Origin: Mizuhopecten yessoensis
Taxonomy: Eukaryota
Length of the DNA stretch: 64,000 bases
Direction of reading: 5' to 3'
NCBI RefSeq assembly: GCF_002113885.1
Contig: NW_018403984.1
Span: 1,903,409 to 1,967,408, forward strand
Shown: piece after piece, positions 1 through 61,820 of the stretch
Layout of the letters: every line of letters starts with the position of its first letter
Numbering within the stretch: position 1 is the first letter of the stretch
The notes under the pieces: generated by a model
The model's database searches: none
Told to the model about the DNA's origin: nothing
What the model saw: the letters and a program-made list of their open reading frames with translations, nothing else
Program-made: the position numbers and the translations under genes

Positions 1-43
<43 letters not shown>

Positions 44-50
44 GTGTGTG
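1..50. repeat. (TG)n microsatellite
   Basis: Directly visible TG run with two TA interruptions; runs off the window start. Confidence 0.97.
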
Positions 51-147
51 TATCATATTGTATGTTGTCTCTGTATTGTTTTGTATATATGTTATGACTG
101 ATAAGTCAACCGACTTAAAGTAATAAAGAACTTGAACTTGAACTTGA
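51..147 (+). mobile_element. 3' tail of a non-LTR retrotransposon (LINE), heavily 5'-truncated
   Basis: T-rich UTR, CTGAT, hairpin TAAGTC-aacc-GACTTA (102-117), AATAAA (122-127), then a (GAACTT)3 tail. Same layout as the tail of the ORF2-bearing LINE at 47290-47336. Confidence 0.65.
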
Positions 148-3699: not shown

Positions 3700-3790
3700 A
3701 CATTAGACGATAGAATTTTATTTTAAAAAAGAATTAAGATCTTAGTATCTCATCAGAAAACGTCATAATTTAATAACAAAAATCTAGACA
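3700..3790 (-). mobile_element. LINE-type 3' tail remnant
   Basis: Minus strand: T-rich lead-in, CTGAT, hairpin TGAGAT-actaag-ATCTTA, AATAAA, then a TTCTA-like tail. Confidence 0.4.
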
Positions 3791-14073: not shown

Positions 14074-14154
14074 TCCCAAATAGGTATTGGCCTTTGTGTT
14101 GAACTTTTTCCGAAATGAAAGAGGCAATGGACTCTGTCCACAGGCCGGTATTCA

Positions 14155-14425
14155 AGTTCTTGTTATTCCCTGCTTAATGTTCAGCATTTGGATTGGTTAA
14201 TCGGTGTCAAGGATAATGTGAACGGGTGGAATAGGGTTTAAGTGCCTTAGCTGTAAGGTAACACTTTAAAGTCGGCATCAGATCCTCGTTATCGCACAAT
14301 ACACCAACATACCATTACTCCAACACACATACACACATGTATGTATACATCAATCACACTGAGGCACGTCCTTACATTATCTTAGCTGTCAATTGGACGT
14401 CAAACAATATTAACCTAAAAACCAG
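14155..14425 (+). mobile_element. Second, headless Meta-type SINE copy
   Basis: Shares TTGTTATTCCCT, CACTTTAAAGTCGGCATCAGAT and GGCACGTCC..CTTAGCTGTCAATTGGACGTCAAAC with 13320-13944. Confidence 0.7.
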
Positions 14426-23889: not shown

Positions 23890-25490
23890 AGCGGATATAC
23901 TGGATAGCATACCTGATGTTGTTGTCCAATATTTGAGATATTGTTGTATTGTATACCGGATATTGTTTAACTGTAACTAAAGACATTTTTTTTATATAAA
24001 ACAGATGTTGTATTACTGCATACCGGATGTTGTAGCAATGTATACTTGATGTTGTATTACTGTATACCGGACGTTGTAGTAATGTATACTTGATGTTGTA
24101 TGACTGTATACCGGATGTTGTAGTAATGTATACTTTATGTTGTATTACTGTACACCGGATGTTGTAGTAATGTATACTTGATCTTGTATTACTGTATACC
24201 GGATGTTGTAGCAATTTATACTTGATGTTGTATTACTGTATACCAGATGTTGTAGTAATGTATACTTGATGTTGTATGACTGTATACCGGATGTTGTAGT
24301 AATGTATACTTTATGTTGTATTACTGTATACCGGATGTTGTACTAATATATACTTGATGTTGTATTACTGTATACCGGACGTTGTAGTAATGTATACTTG
24401 ATGTTGTATGACTGTATACTGGATGTTGTAGCAATGTATACTTGATGTTCTATTACTGTATACCGGATGTTGTAGTAATATATACTTGATGTTGTATTAC
24501 TGTATACCGGATGTTGTAGGAATTTATACTTGATGTTGTATTACTGTATTCCGGATGTTGTAGTAATGTATACTTGATGTTGTATGACTGTATACCGGAT
24601 GTTGTAGTAATGTATTCTTGATGTTGTATTACTGTATACCGGATGTTGGAGTAATGTATACTTGATGTGGTATTACTGTATACCGGATGTTGTAGTAATT
24701 TATACTTGATGTTGTATCACTGTATACCGGATGTTGTAGTAATGTATTCTTGATGTTGTATTACTGTATACCGGATGTTGTAGGAATTTATACTTGATGT
24801 TGTATTACTGTATACCGGGTGTTGTAGCAATGTATACTTGATGTTGTATTGCTGTATACCGGATGTTGTAGCAATGTATACTTGATGTTGTTTTACTGTA
24901 TACCGGATGTTGTAGTAATGTTTACTTGATGTTGTATTACTGTATACCGGATGTTGTAGGAATTTATACTTGATGTTGTATTACTGTATACCAGATGTTG
25001 TAGTAATGTATACTTGATGTTGTACTACTGTATACCGGATGTTGTAGTAATGTATTCTTGATGTTGTATTACTGTATACCGGATGTTGTAGAAATTTATA
25101 CTTGATGTTGTATTACTGTATACCAGATGTTGTACGAATGTATACTTGATGTTGTATTACTGTATACCGGATGTTTTAGCAATGTATACTTGATGTTGTA
25201 TTACTGCATACCGGATGTTGTAGCAATGTATACTTGATGTTGTACTACTGTATACCGGATGTTGTAGTAATGTATTCTTGATGTTGTATTACTGTATACC
25301 GGATGTTGTAGTAATTTATACTTGATGTTGTATTACTGTATACCGGATGTTGTAGTAATGGAAACCGGAGGTTGTATACCTATACACCGGATGTTGTCAT
25401 ACTTTTTACCAGATGTTATATTATTGTATACCGGATGTTGTAATACTGTTGACCGGATGCTGTTTTACCGTATACCGGAGGTTGTTGTGC
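23890..25490. repeat. 44-bp satellite (dimer of 22-mers), about 31 core copies with decayed flanks
   Basis: TGTATACCGGATGTTGTAGTAA + TGTATACTTGATGTTGTATTAC, period 44 (24061, 24105). Confidence 0.97.
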
Positions 25491-30557: not shown

Positions 30558-32940
30558 TCATATAGATCCTATCAGCTTTACTGCCTAAATATGAAAATTA
30601 AATATTAATGTCACATACCTATAGAGGTTACACCTCGAATGTAAATCATCGTTACGCTAGCAATGTGTTTGTACACACGTGCAAGTATACACCCGTGTAT
30701 CGACACACACGTGCATACATGTTACATTAGTCATGAGTTTGTATGCCTGTACAGGTATACACTCGTGTATCGACACACACGTGATGTTCCATTAGTCATG
30801 TGTTTTTATGCCTGTACAGGTATACACACGTGGATCGACACACACGTGATGTTACATCAGTCATGTGTTTTTATGCCTGTACAGGTATACACCCGTGTAT
30901 CGACCCACACGTTATGTTACATTAGTCATGTGTTTGCATGCCTGTACAGGTATACACACGTGAATCGACACACACGTGATGTTACATCAGTCATGTGTTT
31001 TTATGCCTGTAAAGGTACACACACGTGTATCGATGCACTGCATACATGTTACATTAGTCATGAGTTTGTATGCCTGTACAGGTATACCCACGTGTATCGA
31101 CAGTCACGTGATGTTACATTAGTCATGGGTTTTTATGCATGTACAGGTATACACACGTGTATCGATGCACACGATCATATAGATCCTATCAGCTTTACTG
31201 CCTAAATATGAAAATTAAATATTAATGACACATACCTATAGAGGTTACACCTCGAATGTAAATCATCGTTACGCTAGCAATGTGTTTGTACACACGTGCA
31301 AGTATCCACCCGTGTATCGACACACACGTGATGTTACATCAGTCATGTGTTTTTATGCCTGTACAGGTATACACCCGTGTATCGAAACACACGTGCATAC
31401 ATGTTACATGAGTCATGTGTTTGTATGCCTGTAGAGGTATACACACGTGTATCGACACACTCGTGATGTTACATTAGTCATGTGGTTGTATGCCTGTACA
31501 GGTATACACCCGTGTATCGACAAACACGTGCATACATGTTACATTAGGCATGTGTTTGTATGCCTGTACAGTTATACACACGTGTATCGATGCACACGAT
31601 CATATAGATCCTATCAGCTTTACTGCCTAAATATGAAAATTAAATATTAATGTCACATACCTATAGAGGTTACACCTCGAATGTAAATCATCGTTACGCT
31701 AGCAATGTGTTTGTACACACGTGCAAGCATACACCCGTGTATCGGCACACACGTGCATACATGTTCCATTAGTCATGTGTTTTTATGCCGTCTCAGGTAT
31801 ACGCACGTGTATCGACACACACGTGATGTTCCATTAGTCATGTGTTTTTATGCATGTACAGTTATACACACGTGTATCGATGCACACGATCATATAGATC
31901 CTATCAGCTTTACTGCCTAAATATGAAAATTAAATATTAATGACACATACCTATAGAGGTTACACCTCGAATGTAAATCATCGTTACGCTAGCAATGTGT
32001 TTGTACACACGTGCAAGTATACACCCGTGTATAGACACACACGTGCATACATGTTACATGAGTCATGTGTTTGTATGCCTGTAAAGGTACACACACGTGT
32101 ATCTCATGTGTTTGTATGCCTGTACAAGTATACACACGTGTATCGACACACCCGTGATGTTACATTAGTCATGTGGTTGTATGCCTGTACAGGTATACAC
32201 CCGTGTATCGAAACACACGTGCATACATGTTACATTAGGCATGTGTTTGTATGCCTGTACAGTTATACACACGTGTATCGATGCACACGATCATATAGAT
32301 CCTATCAGCTTTACTGCCTAAATATGAAAATTAAATATTAATGTCACATACCTATAGAGGTTACACCTCGAATGTAAATCATCGTTACGCTAGCAATGTG
32401 TTTGTACACACGTGCAAGTATACACCCGTGTATAGACACACACGTGCATACATGTTACATGAGTCATGTGTTTGTATGCCTGTACAGGTAGACACACGTG
32501 TATCGACACACACGCGATGTTACATTAGTCATGTGTTTGGATGCCTGTACAGGTATACACACGTGTATCGACCCACACGTGATGTTACATTAGTCACGTG
32601 TTTTTATGCATGTACAGGTATACACACGTGTATCCACAAACACGTGATGTTACATTAGTCATGTGTTTTTATGCATGTACAGGTATACACACGTGTATCG
32701 ATGCACACGTGCATACATGTTACGTTAGTCATGTGTTTGTATGCCTGTAAAGGTACACACACGTGTATCGATGCACATGTGTATACATGTTACGTTAGCC
32801 ATTGGTCTGTATGTACGTGGAGGTAGACACACGTTCAGGTATACACACGTACATACATGTTAGGTTGGCCTAGTATTTGTACATATTTGCAATTATACAC
32901 ACGTGTATAGCGTCACACACGTTTATAGAAGTTACACAAG
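30558..32940. repeat. Modular satellite: about 155-bp head x5 with variable runs of 65/70-bp subunits
   Basis: Head TCATATAGATCCTATCAGCTTTACTGCCTAAAT... at 30558, 31175, 31600, 31890, 32291. Subunit TGTTACATTAGTCATGTGTTTTTATGCCTGTACAGGTATACACACGTGTATCGACACACACGTGA, period 65 (70 with a CATAC insert). Confidence 0.95.
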
Positions 32941-40298: not shown

Positions 40299-40497
40299 CT
40301 GCAGGTAAATAGTTAAAGGCTATGTATTTTAAGCAAATTTGTATTTGAGGCTAACCAATTAAGAACCCCTTATCTAATTATCATGTACTTTAATGTACAT
40401 ATTCTCTGTACATTCTTCACACAACTGTATTCTGTATCAGGTTCCGATGGGCCTATGGCCTAAAGTTTTAATAAATCTTGAATTTTGAAAAAAAAAA
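40299..40497 (+). mobile_element. About 200-bp 3' stub related to the LINE at 47290-47805
   Basis: 40320 onward translates LCILSKFVFEANQLR, versus LCTLGKFIYEANKLR in the 47-kb copy. Shares ATTCTCTGTACATT and GATGGGCCTATGGCCTAAA..AATAAATCTTGAA. Confidence 0.8.
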
Positions 40498-41526
40498 CCT
40501 TCACAGTGTTATTTGCATTGTAAATGAGTGACATATAAATACATCGCTCATTCAGATATGGAAATGATAATAATGTATGTATCTCGCTCGCCACATTCCT
40601 CTGCCTTCAATCCAGTGAGTAACAGTAAATGTCAATAGTTGATTGACTGACCAGTTGCAGACGATTTACTTGGATTTCACAAACAAAAATCTACACGTAG
40701 AATATAATGCATCTCTGAAGGGCAATACATGTACTTCCTTAATTTCAACCCCGGAGCACCAGTACAACCTCAGGTAAACTTACAATGTATATTATACCAT
40801 TTACATATATAAAAAGTGCTGACAACACCGTTACATTGGTATACCTACGACACACTCTTTATCCTTCCACGCTCATCATCTGTATAAATAAATTAACAAA
40901 ATGACAAATCGGCGTTTAAAACAAGTCGCTTTGATCTCACCGTAACCGACTCAATCTCACACGACTAATGTAGTTCTGATACAATAAAATGAAACGGTCG
41001 ACATCCATTAAGATGGCTAGTGGAAGATGGCGGCAATCTTAAGAATGTATACTACCAGCATGCTTTCATAATTTCCTGCAATAAAATTCTCATTAAATTG
41101 AATATTTTCTGGTATTAGCATGTATAATGACAGTCGATATGTCCTGGGGTAAAGTCATTTAGGAGTGTAATGTCAACCGAAAAAGGGAAACTTTCACAGA
41201 TCAGTTCGGCGATAGCGGCTAGGAGTTGAAGTCAAAGCTATAGAAATGATCTCAATATGAACGACCGGGCCCCAAAGATATATCTAGTCGTTTGAGAATT
41301 TAATACGTTTTCATAATTCATGTATTTGTTCATTACACTCACTTGTCACATGGAGTTTAGTAAATACAGTTTTATCATTGCGTGTTTGATTGATAGGCTG
41401 TCAATTCCGTGTCTGAGGAAGGCTTACTTTCTAAATCCAGAGGATATTCTGACCTTTTATAGGTTTGTTCTTTTAAAAAATGCCTAGCACACCTGTTCAG
41501 ATATATACACAAACATACATGGGCCT

Positions 41527-47289: not shown

Positions 47290-47805
47290 TCAAGTTTTTC
47301 AAGTTTTATTCGAAATTTAGGCCATTGGCCCATCAGTATACAATACATATTATACACAAATCATGGACAATGTACAGAGAATGAAGACAATCATATTCAA
47401 TTTTAATACCCTTAATTTGTTTGCCTCATAGATGAATTTTCCTAGTGTACACAATTCTTTAATATTATGGACACTCAATAACTGAACGGCTTTAAACACA
47501 GATGGTTTTTACAATAATAGCTTTTGATAAAACGTGATCTGAGATTTTGGAATTTAGAACAGACCAATAAAAAATGAAATTCGTCCTCTACTTCAGACGG
47601 GGAGTTACACTGTTTACAATATCTACGTTCTCTAGGTATATTATTATACCTTCCAACTTCTACAACCAACGAATGTGTAGATGTAAGGATTCGAGTTAAA
47701 CATATGCGATATTTCATTGGTATATATTTTGTGAGGTAAAATTGTAATGATTCTCCAAAATCAATGATATTTTCATACAATAAACATTTTGGAGAGTTTT
47801 CCACT
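47290..47805 (-). pseudogene. 5'-truncated non-LTR retrotransposon: ORF2 C-terminal Cys/His domain plus 3' UTR (RTE-X/CR1-group-like)
   Basis: SPKCLLY..LQFYL..HSLVVEVGRYNNIPRERRYCKQC..EDEFHFLLVCSKFQNLR is a typical LINE ORF2 C-terminal motif. Restoring one base in the run at 47506-47510 continues KPSVFKAVQLLSVHNIKELCTLGKFIYEANKLR. Ends with AATAAA and CTTGAA-like repeats. Clade not verified. Confidence 0.88.
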
Positions 47806-47991
47806 GGGGCCCTACGTAACAATGTATGAGAAATACTAACTGGTTTTTTGTTATGCTTGAAAACGTCATCTCGATGAGTTATAAGCTGTACCTGGGCCAT
47901 GCGATTTCTATGCGTAGATACATAACGAATTTAGTCCATAACAACGGCAGCCAGGATTTCCCGGGACCTCAACGCTTACAAGTAAACTGTA

Positions 47992-49735
47992 ATGTACGAC
48001 TGGTTCTCTCTAGGTAAACGTGATCATTACAACTCCTTACATGTACGACTGGTTCTCTCTAGGTAAACGTGATCATTACCACTCCTTACATGTAGAACTG
48101 GTTATCTCTAGGTAAAACGTGATCATTACAACTCCTTACATTTACGACTGGTTCTCTCTAGGTAAACGTGATCATTACCAATCCTTACATGTAGAACTGG
48201 TTATCTCTAGGTAAAACGTGAGGTTCTCTCTAGGTAAACGTGATCATTACCAATCCTTACATGTAGAACTGGTTATCTCTAGGTAAAACGTGATCATTAC
48301 CACTCCTTACATGTACGGCTGGTTCTCTCTAGGTAAACGTGATCATTACAACTCCTTACATGTACGACTGGTTCTTTCTAGGTAAACGTGATCATTACAA
48401 CTTCTTACATGTACGACTGATTCTCGCTAGTGAAACGTGATCATTACAACTCCTTACATGTACGACTGGTTCTCTCTAGGTAAAACGTGATCATTACCAC
48501 TCTTTACATGTACGACTGGTTCTCTCTAGGTAAAACGTGATCATTACAACTCCTTACATGTACGACTGGTTCTCTCTAGGTAAAACGTGATCATTACAAC
48601 TCCTTACATGTACGACTGGTTCTCTCTAGGTAAAACGTGATCATTACAACTCCTTACATGTACGACTGGTTCTCTCTAGGTAAAACGTGATCATTACAAC
48701 TCCTTACATGTACGACTGGTTCTCTCTAGGTAAAACGTGATCATTACAACTCCTTACATGTACGACTGGTTCTCTCTAGGTAAAACGTGATCATTACAAC
48801 TCCTTACATGTACGACTGGTTCTCTCTAGGTAAAACGTGATCATTACAACTCCTTACATGTACGACTGGTTCTCTCTAGGTAAAACGTGATCATTACAAC
48901 TCCTTACATGTACGACTGGTTCTCTCTAGGTAAAACGTGATCATTACAACTCCTTACATGTACGACTGGTTCTCTCTAGGTAAAACGTGATCATTACAAC
49001 TCCTTACATGTACGACTGGTTCTCTCTAGGTAAAACGTGATCATTACAACTCCTTACATGTACGACTGGTTCTCTCTAGGTAAAACGTGATCATTACAAC
49101 TCCTTACATGTACGACTGGTTCTCTCTAGGTAAAACGTGATCATTACAACTCCTTACATGTACGACTGGTTCTCTCTAGGTAAAACGTGATCATTACAAC
49201 TCCTTACATGTACGACTGGTTCTCTCTAGGTAAAACGTGATCATTACAACTCCTTACATGTACGACTGGTTCTCTCTAGGTAAAACGTGATCATTACAAC
49301 TCCTTACATGTACGACTGGTTCTCTCTAGGTAAAACGTGATCATTACAACTCCTTACATGTACGACTGGTTCTCTCTAGGTAAAACGTGATCATTACAAC
49401 TCCTTACATGTACGACTGGTTCTCTCTAGGTAAAACGTGATCATTACAACTCCTTACATGTACGACTGGTTCTCTCTAGGTAAAACGTGATCATTACAAC
49501 TCCTTACATGTACGACTGGTTCTCTCTAGGTAAAACGTGATCATTACAACTCCTTACATGTACGACTGGTTCTCTCTAGGTAAAACGTGATCATTACAAC
49601 TCCTTACATGTACGACTGGTTCTCTCTAGGTAAAACGTGATCATTACAACTCCTTACATGTACGACTGGTTCTCTCTAGGTAAAACGTGATCATTACAAC
49701 TCCTTACATGTACGACTGGTTCTCTCTAGGTAAAA
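47992..49735. repeat. 50-bp satellite, about 35 copies
   Basis: TACGACTGGTTCTCTCTAGGTAAAACGTGATCATTACAACTCCTTACATG. Variant units at 47992-48503, identical units at 48504-49735. Confidence 0.98.
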
Positions 49736-50629: not shown

Positions 50630-53600
50630 TTGAAAGAATAGGCGAATGTAGAGAAAAGGGAAAGGGAAGATGGGGATAGAGAAAGGAAGGTAACCAGAGA
50701 GGGAAAGGGAGGGGATGATAGAGAGAGGAAGGAAACCAGAGAGGGAAAGGGAGGGGATGATAGAGAGAGGAAGGTAACAATAGAGGGAAAGGGAGGGGAT
50801 GATAGAAAGGGGAAAGTAACCAGAGAGGGAAAGGGAGGGGAATGATAGAGAGAGAAAGGTTACCAGAGAGGGAAAGAGAGGGGAATGATAGAGCGATGAA
50901 GGTAACAATAGAGGGAAAGGGAGGGGATGATAAAGAGGAAGGTAACCAGAGAGGGAAATGGAGGGGATGATAGAGAGAGGAAGGTAACCAGAGAGGGAAA
51001 GGGAGGGGATGATAGCGCGATGAAGGTAACAATAGAGGGAAAGGGAAGGAATGACAGAGCGAGGAAGGTAACAATAGAGGGAAATGGAGGGGATGATAGA
51101 GAGAGGAAGGTAACCAGAGAGGGAAAGGGAGGGGATGATAGAGTGGGGAAGGTAAACAGAGAGGAAAAGGGAGGGGATGATAGAGCGATGAAGGTAACAG
51201 TAGGATGATAGAGCGATGAAGGTAACAATAGAGGGAAAGGGAGGGGATAATAGAGAGGAAGGTAACCAGAGAGGGAAATGGAGGGGATGATAGAGAGAGG
51301 AAGGTAACCAGAGAGGGAAAGGGAGGGGATGATAGCGCGATGAAGGTAACAATAGAGGGAAAGGGAAGGAATGATAGAGCGGGGAAGGTAACAATAGAGG
51401 GAAATGGAGGGGATGATAGAGAGAGGAAGGTAACCAAAGAGGGAAAAGGAGGGGATGATAGAGAGAGGAAGGTAACAATAGAGGGAAAGGGAGGGGAATG
51501 ATAGAGAAGGGAAGGTAGCAATAGAGGGAAAGGGAGGGAATGATAGAGAGGAGAAGGTAACAATAGAGGGAAAGGGAGGGAATGATAGAGCAATGAAGGT
51601 AACCAGAGAGGGAAAGGGAGGGGATGATAAAGAGGGGAAGGTAGCAATAGAGGAAAAGGGAGGAGATGATAGAGAGGGGAAGGTAGCAATAGAGGGAAAG
51701 GGAGGGGATGATAGAGAGAGAAAGGTAGCAATAGAGGAAAAGGGAGGAGATGATAGAGAGGGGAAGGTAGCAATAGAGGGAAAGGGAGGGGATGATAGAG
51801 AGAGAAAGGTAACCAGAGAGGGAAAGGGAGGGGAATGATAGAGAGGGGAAGGTAACCAGAGAGGGAAAGGGAGGGGAATGATAGAGAGGGGAAGGTAACC
51901 AGAGAGGGAAAGGGAGGGGATGATAGAAAGAGGAAGGTAGCAATAGAGGGAAAGGGAGGGGATGATAGAGAGGGGAAGGTAACCAGAGAGGGAAAGGGAG
52001 GGGAATAATAGAGAGGGGAAGGTAGCAATATAGGGAAAGGGAGGTGATGATAGAGAGGGGAAGGTAACCAGAGAGGGAAAGGGAGGGGATTAATAGAGAG
52101 GGGAAGGTAGCAATATAGGGAAAGGGAGGTGATGATAGAGAGGGGAAGGTAACCAGAGAGGGAAAGGGAGGGGAATAATAGAGAGGGGAAGGTAGCAATA
52201 TAGGGAAAGGGAGGTGATGATAGAGAAGGGAAGGTAACCAGAGAGGGAAAGGGAGGGGATGATAGAGCGATGAAGGTAACAATAGAGGGAAAGGGAGGGG
52301 AATGATAAAAAGGGGAAGGTAGCAATATAGGGAAAGGGAGGGGATGATAGAGAGAGGAAGGTAACCAGAGACGGAAAGGGAGGGAATGATAGAGCGATGA
52401 AGGTAACAGTAGAGGGAAAGGGAGGGGAATGATAAAGAGGGGAAGGTAGCAATATAGGGAAAGGGAGGGGATGATAGAGAGGGGAAGGTAACCAGAGACG
52501 GAAAGGGAGGGAATGATAGAGCGATGAAGGTAACAGTAGAGGGAAAGGGAGGGGAATGATAAAGAGGGGAAGGTAGCAATATAGGGAAAGGGAGGGGATG
52601 ATAGAGAGGGGAAGGTAGCAATAGAGGGAAAGGGAGGGAATGATAGAGAGGGGAAGGTAACAATAGAGGGAAAGGGAGGGGAATGATAAAGAGGGGAAGG
52701 TAGCAATATAGGGAAAGGGAGGGGATGATAGAGAGAGGAAGGTAACCAGAGACGGAAAGGGAGGGAATGATAGAGCGATGAAGGTAACAGTAGAGGGAAA
52801 GGGAGGGGAATGATAAAGAGGGGAAGGTAGCAATATAGGGAAAGGGAGGGGATGATAGAGAGGGGAAGGTAGCAATAGAGGGAAAGGGAGGGAATGATAG
52901 AGAGGGGAAGGTAACAATAGAGGGAAAGGGAGGGGAATGATAAAGAGGGGAAGGTAGCAATATAGGGAAAGGGAGGGGATGATAGAGAGAGGAAGGTAAC
53001 CAGAGACGGAAAGGGAGGGAATGATAGAGCGATGAAGGTAACAGTAGAGGGAAAGGGAGGGGAATGATAAAGAGGGGAAGGTAGCAATATAGGGAAAGGG
53101 AGGGGATGATAGAGAGAGGAAGGTAACCAGAGACGGAAAGGGAGGGAATGATAGAGCGATGAAGGTAACAGTAGAGGGAAAGGGAGGGGAATGATAAAGA
53201 GGGGAAGGTAGCAATATAGGGAAAGGGAGGGGATGATAGAGAGGGGAAGGTAACCAGAGACGGAAAGGGAGGGAATGATAGAGCGATGAAGGTAACAGTA
53301 GAGGGAAAGGGAGGGGAATGATAAAGAGGGGAAGGTAGCAATATAGGGAAAGGGAGGGGATGATAGAGAGGGGAAGGTAGCAATAGAGGGAAAGGGAGGG
53401 AATGATAGAGAGGGGAAGGTAACAATAGAGGGAAAGGGAGGGGAATGATAAAGAGGGGAAGGTAGCAATATAGGGAAAGGGAGGGGATGATAGAGAGAGG
53501 AAGGTAACCAGAGACGGAAAGGGAGGAAATGATAGAGCGATGAAGGTAACAGTAGAGGGAAAGGGAGGGGAATGATAAAGAGGGGAAGGTAGCAATATAG

Positions 53601-56594
53601 GGAAAGGGAGGGGATGATAGAGAGAGGAAGGTAACCAGAGACGGAAAGGGAGGAAATGATAGAGCGATGAAGGTAACAGTAGAGGGAAAGGGAGGGGAAT
53701 GATAAAGAGGGGAAGGTAGCAATATAGGGAAAGGGAGGGGATGATAGAGAGAGGAAGGTAACCAGAGACGGAAAGGGAGGAAATGATAGAGCGATGAAGG
53801 TAACAGTAGAGGGAAAGGGAGGGGAATGATAAAGAGGGGAAGGTAGCAATAGAGGGAAAGGGAGGGGATGATAGAGAGGGGAAGGTAACCAGAGAGGGAA
53901 AGGGAGGGGATGATAGAGAGAGGAAGGTAGCCAGACAGGGAAAGGAAGGGAATGATAGAGCGATGAAGGTAACAGTAGAGGGAAAAGGAGAGGATGATAG
54001 AGAGGGGAAGGTAACCAGAGAGGGAAAGGGAGGAAATGATAGAGAGGGGAAGGTAACCAGAGAGGGAAAGGGAGGGAATGATAGAGCGATGAAGGTAACA
54101 GTAGAGGGAAAGGGAGGGGATGATAGAGAGGGGAAGGTAACCAGAGAGGGGAATGGAGGGGATGATAGAGAGAAGAAGGTAGCCAGACAGGGGCGATGAA
54201 GGTAACAGTAGACGATGAAGGTAACAGTAGAGGGAAAGGGAGGGGATGCTAGAGAGGGGAAGGTAACCAGAGAGGGAAAGGGAGGGGAATGATAGAGAGA
54301 GAAAGGTTACCAGAGAGGGAAAGGGAGGTGATGATAGAGAGAGAAAGGTTACCAGAGAGGTAAAGGGAGGGGAATGATAGAGAGAGGATGGTAACAATAG
54401 AGGGAAAGGGAGGGGATGATAAAGAGGGGAAGGTAACCAGAGAGGGAAAGGGAGGGGATGATAAAGAGGGGAAGGTAACCAGAGAGTGATAGGGAGGGGA
54501 TGATAAAGAGGGGAAGGTAGCAATAGAGGAAAAGGGAGGGGATGATAGAGAGGGGAAGGTAACAAGAGAGGGAAAGGGAGGGGATGATAGAGCGAGGAAG
54601 GTAACCAGAGAGGGAAAGGGAGGGGATAATAGGGAAAGGGAGGGGATGATAGAGAGAGGAAGGTAGCCAGACAGGGAAAGGAAGGGAATGATAGAGCGAT
54701 GAAGGTAACAGTAGAGGGAAAGGGAGGGGATGAAAGAGAGGGGAAGGTAACCAGAGAGGGAAAAGGAGGGGATGATAGAGCGATGAAGGTAACCAGGGAA
54801 AGGGAGGAAATGATAGAGAGGGGAAGGTAACCAGAGAGGACAAGGGAGAGGATGATAAAGAGAGGAAGGTAACAATAGAGGGGAAGGGAGGGGAATGATA
54901 GAGCGATGAAGGTAACAGTAGAGGGAAAGGGAGGGGATGAAAGAGAGGGGAAGGTAACCAGAGAGGGAAAAGGAGGGGATGATAGAGCGATGAAGGTAAC
55001 AGTAGAGGGAAAGGGAGGGGATGAAAGAGAGGGGAAGGTAACCAGAGAGGGAAAAGGAGGGGATGATAGAGCGATGAAGGTAACAGTAGAGGGAAAGGGA
55101 GGGGATGAAAGAGAGGGGAAGGTAACCAGAGAGGGAAAAGGAGGGGATGATAGAGCGATGAAGGTAACAGTAGAGGGAAAGGGAGGGGATGAAAGAGAGG
55201 GGAAGGTAACCAGAGAGGGAAAAGGAGGGGATGATAGAGCGATGAAGGTAACAGTAGAGGGAAAGGGAGGGGATGAAAGAGAGGGGAAGGTAACCAGAGA
55301 GGGAAAAGGAGGGGATGATAGAGCGATGAAGGTAACAGTAGAGGGAAAGGGAGGGGATGATAAAGAGGGGAAAGTAGCAATAGAGGAAAAGGGAGGAGAT
55401 GATAGAGAGGTGAAGGTAGCAATAGAGGGAAAGGGAGGGGATGATAGAGAGAGAAAGGTAACCAGAGAGGGAAAGGGAGGGGAATGATAGAGAGGGAATG
55501 ATAGAGCGATGAAGGTAACAGTAGAGGGAAAGGGAGGGGATGAAAGAGAGGGGAAGGTAACCAGAGAGGGAAAAGGAGGGGATGATAGAGCGATGAAGGT
55601 AACAGTAGAGGGAAAGGGAGGGGATGAAAGAGAGGGGAAGGTAACCAGAGAGGGAAAAGGAGGGGATGATAGAGCGATGAAGGTAACAGTAGAGGGAAAG
55701 GGAGGGGATGAAAGAGAGGGGAAGGTAACCAGAGAGGGAAAAGGAGGGGATGATAGAGCGATGAAGGTAACCAGGGAGGGAAAGGGAGGGGATAATAGAG
55801 CGATGAAGGTAACAATAGAGTGAAAGGGAGGGGATGATAGAGAGAGAAAGGTAACCAGAGAGGGAAAGGGAGGGGATGATAGAGCGATGAAGGTAACCAG
55901 AGAGGGAAAGGGAGGGGATAATAGAGCGATGAAGGTAACAATAGAGGGAAAGGGAGGGGATGATAGAGAGGGGAAGGTAACCAGAGAGGGAAAGGGAGGG
56001 GAATGATAGAGAGAGAAAGGTTACCAGAGAGGGAAAGAGAGGGGAATGATAGAGAGAGGAAGGTAACAATAGAGGGAAAGGGAGGGAATGATAAAGAGGG
56101 GAAGGTAGCAATATAGGGAAAGGGAGGGGATGATAGAGAGGGGAAGGTAACCAGAGAGGGAAAGGGAGGGGAATGATAGAGAGAGAAAGGTTACCAGAGA
56201 GGGAGAGAGAGGGGAATGATAGAGAGAGGAAGGAAACAATAGGGGGAAAGGGAGGGAATGATAAAGAGGGGAAGGTAGCAATATACGGAAAGGGAGGGGA
56301 TGATAGAGAGAGGAAGGTTACCAGAGCGGGAAAGAGAGGGGAATGATAGAGAGAGGAATGTAACAATAGAGGGAAAGGGAGGGGATGATAGAGAGGGGAA
56401 GGTAGCAATATAGGGAAAGGGAGGGAATGATAGAGAGGGGAAGGTTACCAGAGAGGTAAAGAGAGGGGATGATAGAGAGAGGAAGGTAACAATAGAGGGA
56501 AAGGGAGTGAATGATAGAGAGGGGAAGGTAATCAGAGAGGGAAAGGGAGGGGAATGATAGAGAGAGAAAGGTAACAATAGAGGGAAAGGGAGGG
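50630..56594 (+). repeat. About 6-kb purine-rich 42/43-bp satellite with higher-order repeats
   Basis: GAAGGTAACCAGAGAGGGAAAGGGAGGGGATGATAGAGAGAG (37/42 purines). 127-bp trimers at 52321-53845; 84-bp dimers at 54906-55325 and 55509-55760. Confidence 0.98.
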
Positions 56595-61644: not shown

Positions 61645-61820
61645 TTTCAAGTTCAACTTCTTTATCAAGCCTTCGGCATTTAACTCATCAGCGATTCAAT
61701 TCAATACTAAAATATGCAATAACATAAAATTCATAAATATTCATAATAATGACAATATTATGACTACTCAATAAAGTCATATTGATCTCTTCTGAACGCA
61801 TTAGAAATTAAATTACATCA
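61645..61820 (-). mobile_element. LINE-type 3' tail remnant
   Basis: Minus strand: T-rich UTR, then CTGATGAGttaaatGCCGAAGGCTTGATAAAGAAGTTGAACTTGAAA; same GAACTT-type tail as 51-147. Confidence 0.55.

What the first reader, a model, noticed from the sequence alone, without database searches (positions are those of the whole stretch)
47290..47336. Shared, co-varying CUGAU-hairpin-AAUAAA module at five LINE 3' ends, resembling a hammerhead core
Seen in sequence, five copies: 98-147(+) CTGA-TAAGTC-aacc-GACTTA..AATAAA-(GAACTT)n; 3700-3756(-) CTGA-TGAGAT-actaag-ATCTTA..AATAAA; 40444-40497(+) CCGA-TGGGCC-tat-GGCCTA..AATAAA-TCTTGAA; 47290-47336(-) CTGA-TGGGCC-aat-GGCCTA..AATAAA-ACTTGAA; 61645-61691(-) CTGA-TGAG[ttaaatg]CC-gaa-GGCTTG-ATAAA-GAAGTTGAACTTGAA. 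Four different stem sequences keep a roughly 6-bp helix at the same position. Two copies are attached to recognisable ORF2 ends. Established: L2/CR1-type LINEs use 3' stem-loops plus microsatellite tails for RT recognition, and hammerheads have CUGANGA-stem II-GAAA. Inference: this is a structure-conserved cis element across divergent bivalve LINE families. It could be the RT-recognition signal or a hammerhead-derived or variant self-cleaving motif. The canonical GAAA is missing (CTAAA/TTAAA), so catalysis is doubtful.
Basis: partly seen in the sequence, partly recalled or inferred. Interest (0 to 1): 0.72.

Follow-up and report, generated by a model that had tools for sequence, protein, structure and literature searches.

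The report
LINE 3' tail hairpin, not ribozyme
The repeated CUGAU-hairpin-AAUAAA motif is the conserved 3' end signal of a group of mollusc jumping genes (LINEs) and their hitch-hikers. It is most likely the handle that their reverse transcriptase recognises, and it is not a hammerhead ribozyme.

Summary
Four of the five listed copies are real and one (3700-3756) is a chance look-alike.

**What it is.** The real copies are the extreme 3' ends of retroposons. The flank-only pattern CYGAT..AATAAA..CTTGAA occurs 618 times in this 988-Mb genome, against 33 for the reversed control.

**Anatomy.** The module has these parts:
- a 3-bp lower helix (A-C-Y with R-G-U);
- a 2x1 internal loop (GA/A);
- a 6-bp upper helix;
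- a free 3-5 nt loop;
- an invariant AAUAAA;
- a microsatellite, (GAACTT)n or a variant.

**Covariation.** It is strong: 96% of cells are paired and 5-7 of 9 pairs show compensatory changes. Slid and shuffled controls are far lower, and RNAalifold finds the same fold.

**Context.** The module lies about 100-130 nt after the ORF2 stop of RT-bearing LINEs, and it also ends a very young ORF-less element. The same architecture follows ORF2 homologues in Pecten, Argopecten, Crassostrea and the limpet Patella.

**Hammerhead reading fails.**
- The C-Y of "CUGA" is base-paired and covaries.
- GAAA is never present.
- GA becomes UA, AA or CA in other lineages.
- Rfam gives no hammerhead hit at E<=10.

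**Verdict.** This is the mollusc version of the stem-loop-plus-microsatellite tail of stringent (L2/CR1-type) LINEs. It is a new member of a known kind and of modest interest. The scan's earlier notes held only this same stretch.

The parts
1..147 (+). 3' part of one copy of family F1, a very young ORF-less retroposon of about 0.55 kb. The copy is cut by the window start and an assembly gap.
   Evidence: At least 530 candidates at 99-100% identity. The 5' boundary is shared among copies; no ORF and no tRNA head were found.
97..121 (+). Hairpin of copy 1. Lower helix ACU/AGU, internal loop GA/A, upper helix UAAGUC/GACUUA, loop AACC.
   Evidence: Model hit 91-136 at 62.9 bits, E 1.4e-14. The MFE fold is the same.
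122..147 (+). AAUAAA (122-127) followed by the (GAACTT)3.3 microsatellite (128-147), which is the true 3' end of the element.
   Evidence: TRF. The repeat number varies from 3 to 5 among copies, and the flanks after it are unrelated.
47290..47813 (-). 5'-truncated copy of LINE family F4.
   Evidence: Aligns with other copies, which have variable 5' ends. At least 328 candidates at 94-97% identity.
47478..47900 (-). ORF2 C-terminal remnant with a Cys/His motif, ending about 140 nt before the hairpin.
   Evidence: ORF listing. tblastn with ORF2 ends of families C and E covers 47508-47750, E 8e-17.
47314..47337 (-). Hairpin of copy 4 (the flagged stretch). Upper helix UGGGCC/GGCCUA, loop AAU. In this copy the lower helix is damaged by a private G-to-U change at 47315.
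   Evidence: Model hit 47298-47343 at 22.2 bits, E 0.0016, although the model was built without this family. The family's modal sequence has AAAGU here.
47290..47310 (-). AAUAAA (47305-47310) and the A-rich ACTTGA repeats that end the element.
40307..40489 (+). Short copy (3' UTR only) of the older family F3, which is related to F4.
   Evidence: 46 candidates at about 70-80% identity; the last ~90 nt cross-match F4.
40443..40466 (+). Hairpin of copy 3. It has the same upper helix as F4 with loop UAU. A private U-to-C change makes CCGA here, where other family members have CUGA.
   Evidence: 11.9 bits, E 1.1.
61646..61691 (-). Old tail remnant. The AUAAAG+repeat tail (61646-61665) is intact except for 1 mismatch. 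The hairpin region (61666-61691) is disrupted by a roughly 7-nt insertion.
3700..3756 (-). Not a member. This is a chance CUGAU plus hairpin with no tail.
   Evidence: (z +0.85).
14151..14211 (-). Weak extra candidate: ACCGA, then 29 nt, then AGGG-AAUAAcaAGAACUUGAA. It may be a decayed copy.
   Evidence: Model hit at 17.7 bits, E 0.028. Not followed up.

Best explanation
The motif is the 3'-terminal cis module of a clade of endonuclease+RT LINEs and of the non-autonomous elements that ride on them. No RNase H domain was detected in these LINEs, so they look CR1/L2-like.

**The RNA module.**
- A bipartite hairpin: lower helix A-C-Y/R-G-U, a 2x1 internal loop, a 6-bp upper helix that opens with an invariant U-A, and a loop of free sequence.
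- Then 0-4 nt of spacer and an invariant AAUAAA.
- Then a family-specific microsatellite.

**Proposed mechanism (inferred by analogy with UnaL2/ZfL2).** ORF2 protein binds the hairpin of its own RNA, or of a rider RNA. Target-primed reverse transcription starts inside the microsatellite, where slippage changes the repeat number. The AAUAAA may also set the transcript's 3' end just downstream, inside or after the repeats.

**Shown here.**
- Position at the extreme 3' end of the elements.
- High copy number.
- Covariation of the helices.
- Conservation of the architecture across mollusc species.
- Neutral decay of inserted copies.

**Inferred.** Protein binding, the priming site and poly(A)-signal use.
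For: - **Frequency:** the flank-only pattern gives 618 genome matches against 33 for the control, and about 95% of the listed matches contain the hairpin.
- **End of the element:** copies end in a microsatellite of variable length followed by unrelated DNA.
- **LINE context:** tails lie about 100-130 nt after ORF2 C-termini in families C, E, B-like and F4. RVT_1 lies upstream in family E.
- **Covariation on the MAFFT alignment of 11 family representatives:** 95.9% of cells paired, 5 of 9 pairs with double changes, and score 0.39 against 0.21 shuffled (0/500). Slid partners give 15-46% paired. RNAalifold predicts the same fold de novo.
- **Covariation with more families and 5 species:** 96.1% paired, 7 of 9 pairs compensatory, score 0.49 against 0.26.
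- **Further stems:** UGAGCA/UGCUCA and UGAGCC/GGCUCA appear.
- **Decay of inserted copies:** within 28 F4 copies, stem and non-stem columns mutate equally (0.61 against 0.68 per column) and 7 of 10 altered pairs are broken. Selection therefore acts on the active lineages, not on dead copies.
- **Other species:** the model hits one site per locus, 60-170 nt after the ORF2 homologue, in Pecten maximus, Patella caerulea, Crassostrea virginica and Argopecten irradians.
- **Published precedent:** stringent LINEs need their 3' stem-loop, which ORF2 binds (PMC4176376). CR1 has a conserved hairpin plus an octamer microsatellite (PMC4316615).
Against: - No experiment shows binding or a requirement for the hairpin.
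- A subfamily with an A.C mismatch at upper pair 3 still reached at least 14 identical copies among the 100 listed, so perfect pairing is not essential.
- The loop sequence is free here, whereas loop identity matters in UnaL2/ZfL2.
- The invariant AAUAAA is unusual for tails thought to work without poly(A), and it could mean that the module's main job is 3'-end processing.
- The alignments were fitted to the model's structure.
- The family sample is about 15-20 related sequences, and no R-scape test was run.
Confidence: 0.8

Rival explanations
1. The module is mainly a transcript 3'-end processing unit. AAUAAA is a true poly(A) signal and the upstream hairpin is an auxiliary or protective structure. 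Reverse transcriptase recognises only the microsatellite.
For: AAUAAA is invariant in every family and species examined, while the spacer and the repeat unit vary. Putative polyadenylation signals in mollusc SINE tails are noted in PMC4758252.
Against: Genomic copies end in the microsatellite and not in poly(A). The helices covary and the internal-loop geometry is conserved, which fits a protein-binding site as in L2-type tails (PMC4176376). The two roles do not exclude each other.
Confidence: 0.1
2. The module is a hammerhead-derived or otherwise self-cleaving RNA that processes the LINE transcript.
For: Some variants read CUGAUGAG followed by a short helix with a GNRA-like loop. This resembles the 5' half of a hammerhead core.
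Against: The C-Y of CUGA pairs and covaries with R-G on the 3' side. The 3' side is always A-A-R-G and never GAAA. GA is UA, AA or CA in Crassostrea, Argopecten and the ENA relatives. No third helix or cleavage-site partner is conserved. No Rfam hammerhead hit appears at E<=10, even for the most similar variants.
Confidence: 0.02
3. The hairpin has no function. The families simply inherited a palindromic stretch from a common ancestor.
For: Upstream 3' UTR blocks are also loosely similar among families, so the tails are homologous. CYGAT plus a hairpin alone is as frequent as chance.
Against: Differences between families are compensatory at 5-7 of 9 pairs and 96% of cells are paired, whereas mutations within a family break pairs. 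The architecture survives between bivalves and a gastropod although the stem sequence changes.
Confidence: 0.05

Closest known systems
3' tails of stringent L2-clade LINEs (eel UnaL2, zebrafish ZfL2-1/ZfL2-2) and their partner SINEs
   Same: A short stem-loop sits near the extreme 3' end and is followed by short tandem repeats. The tail is shared with non-autonomous riders. In these known systems the stem-loop is bound by ORF2 and is needed for retrotransposition (PMC4176376).
   Different: Here the hairpin has two helices separated by a conserved 2x1 internal loop. The loop sequence is free. An invariant AAUAAA lies between the hairpin and the repeats. The repeat unit is a hexamer or another family-specific unit. 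Function is untested, and membership of these LINEs in the L2 clade was not established.
Amniote CR1 3' UTR hairpin plus octamer microsatellite
   Same: A hairpin plus microsatellite is conserved across many subfamilies and is proposed as the RT recognition site (PMC4316615).
   Different: The sequence, repeat unit and host phylum all differ. No sequence homology was tested.
Mammalian L2/MIR tail (from memory, not tested here)
   Same: As I recall it, the order is a small hairpin, then AATAAA, then a TGAA-type repeat, which is the same order of parts as here.
   Different: This is recalled and was not checked with a tool. Treat it as a lead only.
Hammerhead ribozyme (Rfam hammerhead families)
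   Same: In some variants the letters CUGAUGAG precede a short helix.
   Different: The core nucleotides are paired here, GAAA is absent, there is no three-way junction, and there is no covariance-model match.

Membership tests
Stringent-type LINE 3' tail (stem-loop plus terminal tandem repeat) | Lies at the extreme 3' end of the element, downstream of the ORF2 stop. | tested here: met
   ORF2 C-termini and RVT_1 lie upstream of the tails. The same placement is seen in four other species.
Stringent-type LINE 3' tail (stem-loop plus terminal tandem repeat) | A stem-loop conserved as structure, with compensatory changes between families. | tested here: met
   and for the contrast with dead copies.
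Stringent-type LINE 3' tail (stem-loop plus terminal tandem repeat) | The element ends in short tandem repeats whose number varies between copies. | tested here: met
   (GAACTT)3-5 in F1 copies. Other repeat units occur in other families and species.
Stringent-type LINE 3' tail (stem-loop plus terminal tandem repeat) | The tail is shared with non-autonomous partner elements. | tested here: met
   F1 is an ORF-less element of about 0.55 kb with a fixed 5' end. It has the same upper stem as LINE-type family B but a different loop. No tRNA-derived head was found, so it is not a classical SINE.
Stringent-type LINE 3' tail (stem-loop plus terminal tandem repeat) | The stem-loop is bound by the cognate ORF2 protein and is required for retrotransposition. 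| not testable with these tools
   Needs binding and retrotransposition assays.
Hammerhead ribozyme | An unpaired CUGANGA core segment. | tested here: not met
   C and Y pair with G and R on the 3' side. The Y-R pair covaries (UA 9, CG 9, UG 1), and RNAalifold predicts the same pairing. GA is not conserved outside the scallop families and Patella.
Hammerhead ribozyme | GAAA immediately 3' of helix II. | tested here: not met
   The hairpin-bearing matches among the roughly 300 strings listed have A-A-R-G after the stem.
Hammerhead ribozyme | A match to the Rfam hammerhead covariance models (three-helix junction). | tested here: not met
   No hit at the gathering threshold in the window. No hit at E<=10 with lax filters on six loci holding tail variants A, C, D, F3 and K and the Pecten tail.
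Hammerhead ribozyme | Site-specific self-cleavage. | not testable with these tools
   Needs a transcription and cleavage assay.
CR1/L2-type LINE rather than I/Nimb-type | APE endonuclease plus RT, with no RNase H domain after the RT. | tested here: inconclusive
   Exo_endo_phos and RVT_1 are present in relatives. No RNase H hit appears at E<=0.1 in five relatives or in the 377-aa ORF2 end of family C. No RT phylogeny with reference clades was made.
Canonical poly(A) signal | AAUAAA followed by cleavage and a poly(A) tail. | tested here: inconclusive
   AAUAAA is invariant, but genomic copies end in repeats and not in poly(A).

The most novel reading that the evidence does not exclude
The conserved internal loop and hairpin might form a new, non-hammerhead self-processing RNA. 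It would trim the LINE transcript next to the microsatellite and so create the exact 3' end used for target-primed reverse transcription.
Probability: 0.02. Interest if true: 0.8.

Novelty: new member of a known kind. Interest (0 to 1): 0.3.

Why it matters
- **Annotation.** The work gives a concrete, testable RNA element (covariance model R1) for a LINE lineage that is abundant and still active in scallops. One rider family is 99-100% identical across hundreds of copies.
- **Age.** The architecture is shared with oysters and a limpet. By the accepted bivalve-gastropod split that makes it very old (general knowledge, not tested here).
- **Practical uses.**
  - Annotating retroposon 3' ends in mollusc genomes.
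  - Pairing orphan SINE tails with their LINE partners; PMC4758252 and PMC11481361 list tails of unknown origin.
  - Providing natural compensatory series for binding studies.
- **False lead removed.** It shows that the resemblance to a ribozyme is misleading.

Tried and rejected
- **Random genome sampling was dropped.** I had planned about 4 Mb of random sample. Variants J, L and N are therefore known only from the matched strings and could not enter the alignments.
- **Literature searches for the tail sequence found nothing relevant**. The supplements of PMC11481361 are not held.
- **Earlier scan notes** held only this same stretch.
- **MAFFT shifted the F4/F3 rows** because of their 3-nt loop. 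Those families were added through model-based alignment instead.
- **More distant ORF2 relatives (37-47% identity)** gave only a weak model hit (L093) or none (L094, L095). By eye they show the same layout with other repeat units. I treat this as suggestive only.
- **A K-turn or C/D-box reading of UGAUGA was rejected.** The internal loop is 2x1 and has no tandem G.A pairs.
- **LINE clade assignment** (L2, CR1 or CR1-Zenon) was left open.

Full report
**The five copies in the window.**
- The copy at 98-147(+) belongs to a very young family, with at least 530 candidates at 99-100% identity.
- The flagged copy at 47290-47336(-) belongs to a LINE family with at least 328 candidates at 94-97% and variable 5' truncation.
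- The copy at 40444(+) belongs to an older family (46 candidates at about 70-80%) whose last ~90 nt cross-match the previous family. These two copies therefore share a stem by descent.
- The copies at 61645(-) and 3700(-) are single copy by blastn.
- The 61645 copy keeps a 20-nt AUAAAG-plus-repeat tail with one mismatch, where 0.02 matches are expected by chance. It is an old remnant.
- The 3700 copy has no tail and no model hit.
- CYGAT followed by a 6-bp hairpin is as common as chance in the window: 5 observed against 3.65 +/- 2.0 simulated. Only the full module is informative.

**Genome-wide frequency.** The flank-only pattern CYGAT, 18-30 nt, AATAAA, 0-3 nt, CTTGAA occurs 618 times against 33 for the reversed control. 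The listed matches, with two sub-searches, show about a dozen sequence variants. Nearly all of them keep a hairpin between the anchors. In family copies the similarity ends in a microsatellite of variable length, and the DNA beyond it is unrelated. This is how retroposon 3' ends look.

**Anatomy and covariation.** A MAFFT alignment of 11 family representatives supports a bipartite hairpin:
- a lower helix A-C-Y with R-G-U;
- an internal loop GA opposite A;
- a 6-bp upper helix that opens with an invariant U-A and has an invariant G-C at position 4;
- a loop of 3-5 nt with no conserved sequence.

AAUAAAG and the repeat follow. On that alignment 95.9% of cells pair and 5 of 9 pairs have changes on both sides. 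The covariation score is 0.39 against 0.21 in shuffles (0 of 500 reach it), and sliding the partners gives 15-46% pairing. RNAalifold finds the same structure without being told it. I built a covariance model, R1, from this alignment.

Adding the F4/F3 families and an internal tail copy gives 95.5% pairing and a score of 0.467 against 0.264. Adding four other species gives 96.1%, 7 of 9 compensatory pairs and 0.49 against 0.26. These two larger alignments are fitted to the model, which favours the structure. The first alignment is not fitted.

Within 28 inserted F4 copies, stem and non-stem columns have mutated at the same rate, and most altered pairs are simply broken. The pairing is therefore maintained in the lineages that keep transposing, not in dead copies. 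One amplified subfamily carries an A.C mismatch at upper pair 3, so the requirement is not absolute.

**What carries the module.**
- ORF2 C-terminal ends with the usual Cys/His motif stop about 100-130 nt before the hairpin in families C, E, a B-like copy and F4. An RVT_1 domain lies further upstream in family E.
- In the window only the 47290 copy has such a remnant.
- The very young family at 98-147 is different. It is about 0.55 kb long with a fixed 5' end, no ORF and no tRNA-like head, so it is a non-autonomous rider.
- That rider also contains an older, partly deleted second tail module upstream of an internal (TG)n.

**Other species.** A word-based protein search with the 377-aa ORF2 end of family C found relatives named from Pecten maximus, Patella caerulea, Crassostrea virginica, Argopecten irradians and others. 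In each of the four loci fetched, R1 hit exactly one site. That site was on the coding strand, 60-170 nt after the gene end, and scored 59.4, 28.1, 25.9 and 21.8 bits. It was followed by a short repeat: GAACTT in Pecten, GAACT in Patella and ATTGA in Crassostrea, with only a degenerate, non-repeated tail in Argopecten. More distant relatives from unnamed ENA assemblies show the same layout by eye, with ACAA, TAT or TATC repeats, but only one weak model hit. Relatives carry Exo_endo_phos and RVT_1 and no detectable RNase H. That fits CR1/L2-type elements, but the clade was not resolved.

**The hammerhead idea fails on each point that could be tested.**
- The C-Y of CUGA is paired, and the Y covaries with its partner (UA 9, CG 9, UG 1).
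- The 3' side of the stem is always A-A-R-G and never GAAA.
- The GA is UA, AA or CA in oyster, bay scallop and other relatives.
- Rfam gives nothing at the gathering threshold in the window. It gives no hammerhead at E<=10 on six loci that hold the most similar variants.

**Most likely mechanism (inference).** This is the recognition tail of a stringent-type LINE. ORF2 protein binds the hairpin, reverse transcription is primed in the repeats, and slippage explains the variable repeat number. This is the mechanism shown for UnaL2 and ZfL2 (PMC4176376) and proposed for the CR1 hairpin plus octamer repeat (PMC4316615). The invariant AAUAAA suggests an added role in forming the RNA 3' end.

**Limits.**
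- No R-scape test was run and no RNA data were obtained.

**Verdict.** The feature is real, and it is the mollusc member of a known kind of element. I found no published description of this tail.

Noticed in passing
L065:1633-1675(-), and the matching part of other F1 copies; in the window this part lies upstream of position 1, in an assembly gap: The very young F1 element is composite. An older tail module (lower helix CC/GG, loop AA/A, a 6-bp stem, AAUAAA, AGUUGAA) lies upstream of an internal (TG)n and is partly deleted in most copies. About 90 nt carrying the active tail follow it. This looks like one tail built on top of another.
   Followed up: partly
G000 places listed (for example C981:1505836-1505874): A subfamily with upper stem UGAGUC/GACCCA has an A.C mismatch at pair 3, yet it accounts for at least 14 identical copies among the 100 listed. 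It could be the intermediate of a G-C to A-U switch, and it shows that a mismatch is tolerated.
   Followed up: no
window 14151-14211(-): A weak model hit (17.7 bits, E 0.028) with the lower helix and tail present and 29 nt in place of the upper hairpin. It may be a decayed copy.
   Followed up: no
window 24004-25485, 30685-32862, 48222-49735, 50675-56594: Four large tandem arrays: 44 bp x34; 65-70 bp units with higher-order periods; 50 bp x30; and a 42-bp purine-rich unit x140 spanning about 5.9 kb that creates long spurious ORFs. The 50-bp array abuts the truncated F4 LINE copy.
   Followed up: no
L084 (G000:C981:728300-738299): Three identical tail copies lie 3.2-3.7 kb apart with shared flanks. 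This is a tandem segmental repeat containing one retroposon end, not three insertions.
   Followed up: no
window 40483-40499: The 40444 copy ends with A10 right after its repeats. The other copies examined showed no A-run at this position. It could be flank sequence or a trace of polyadenylation.
   Followed up: no
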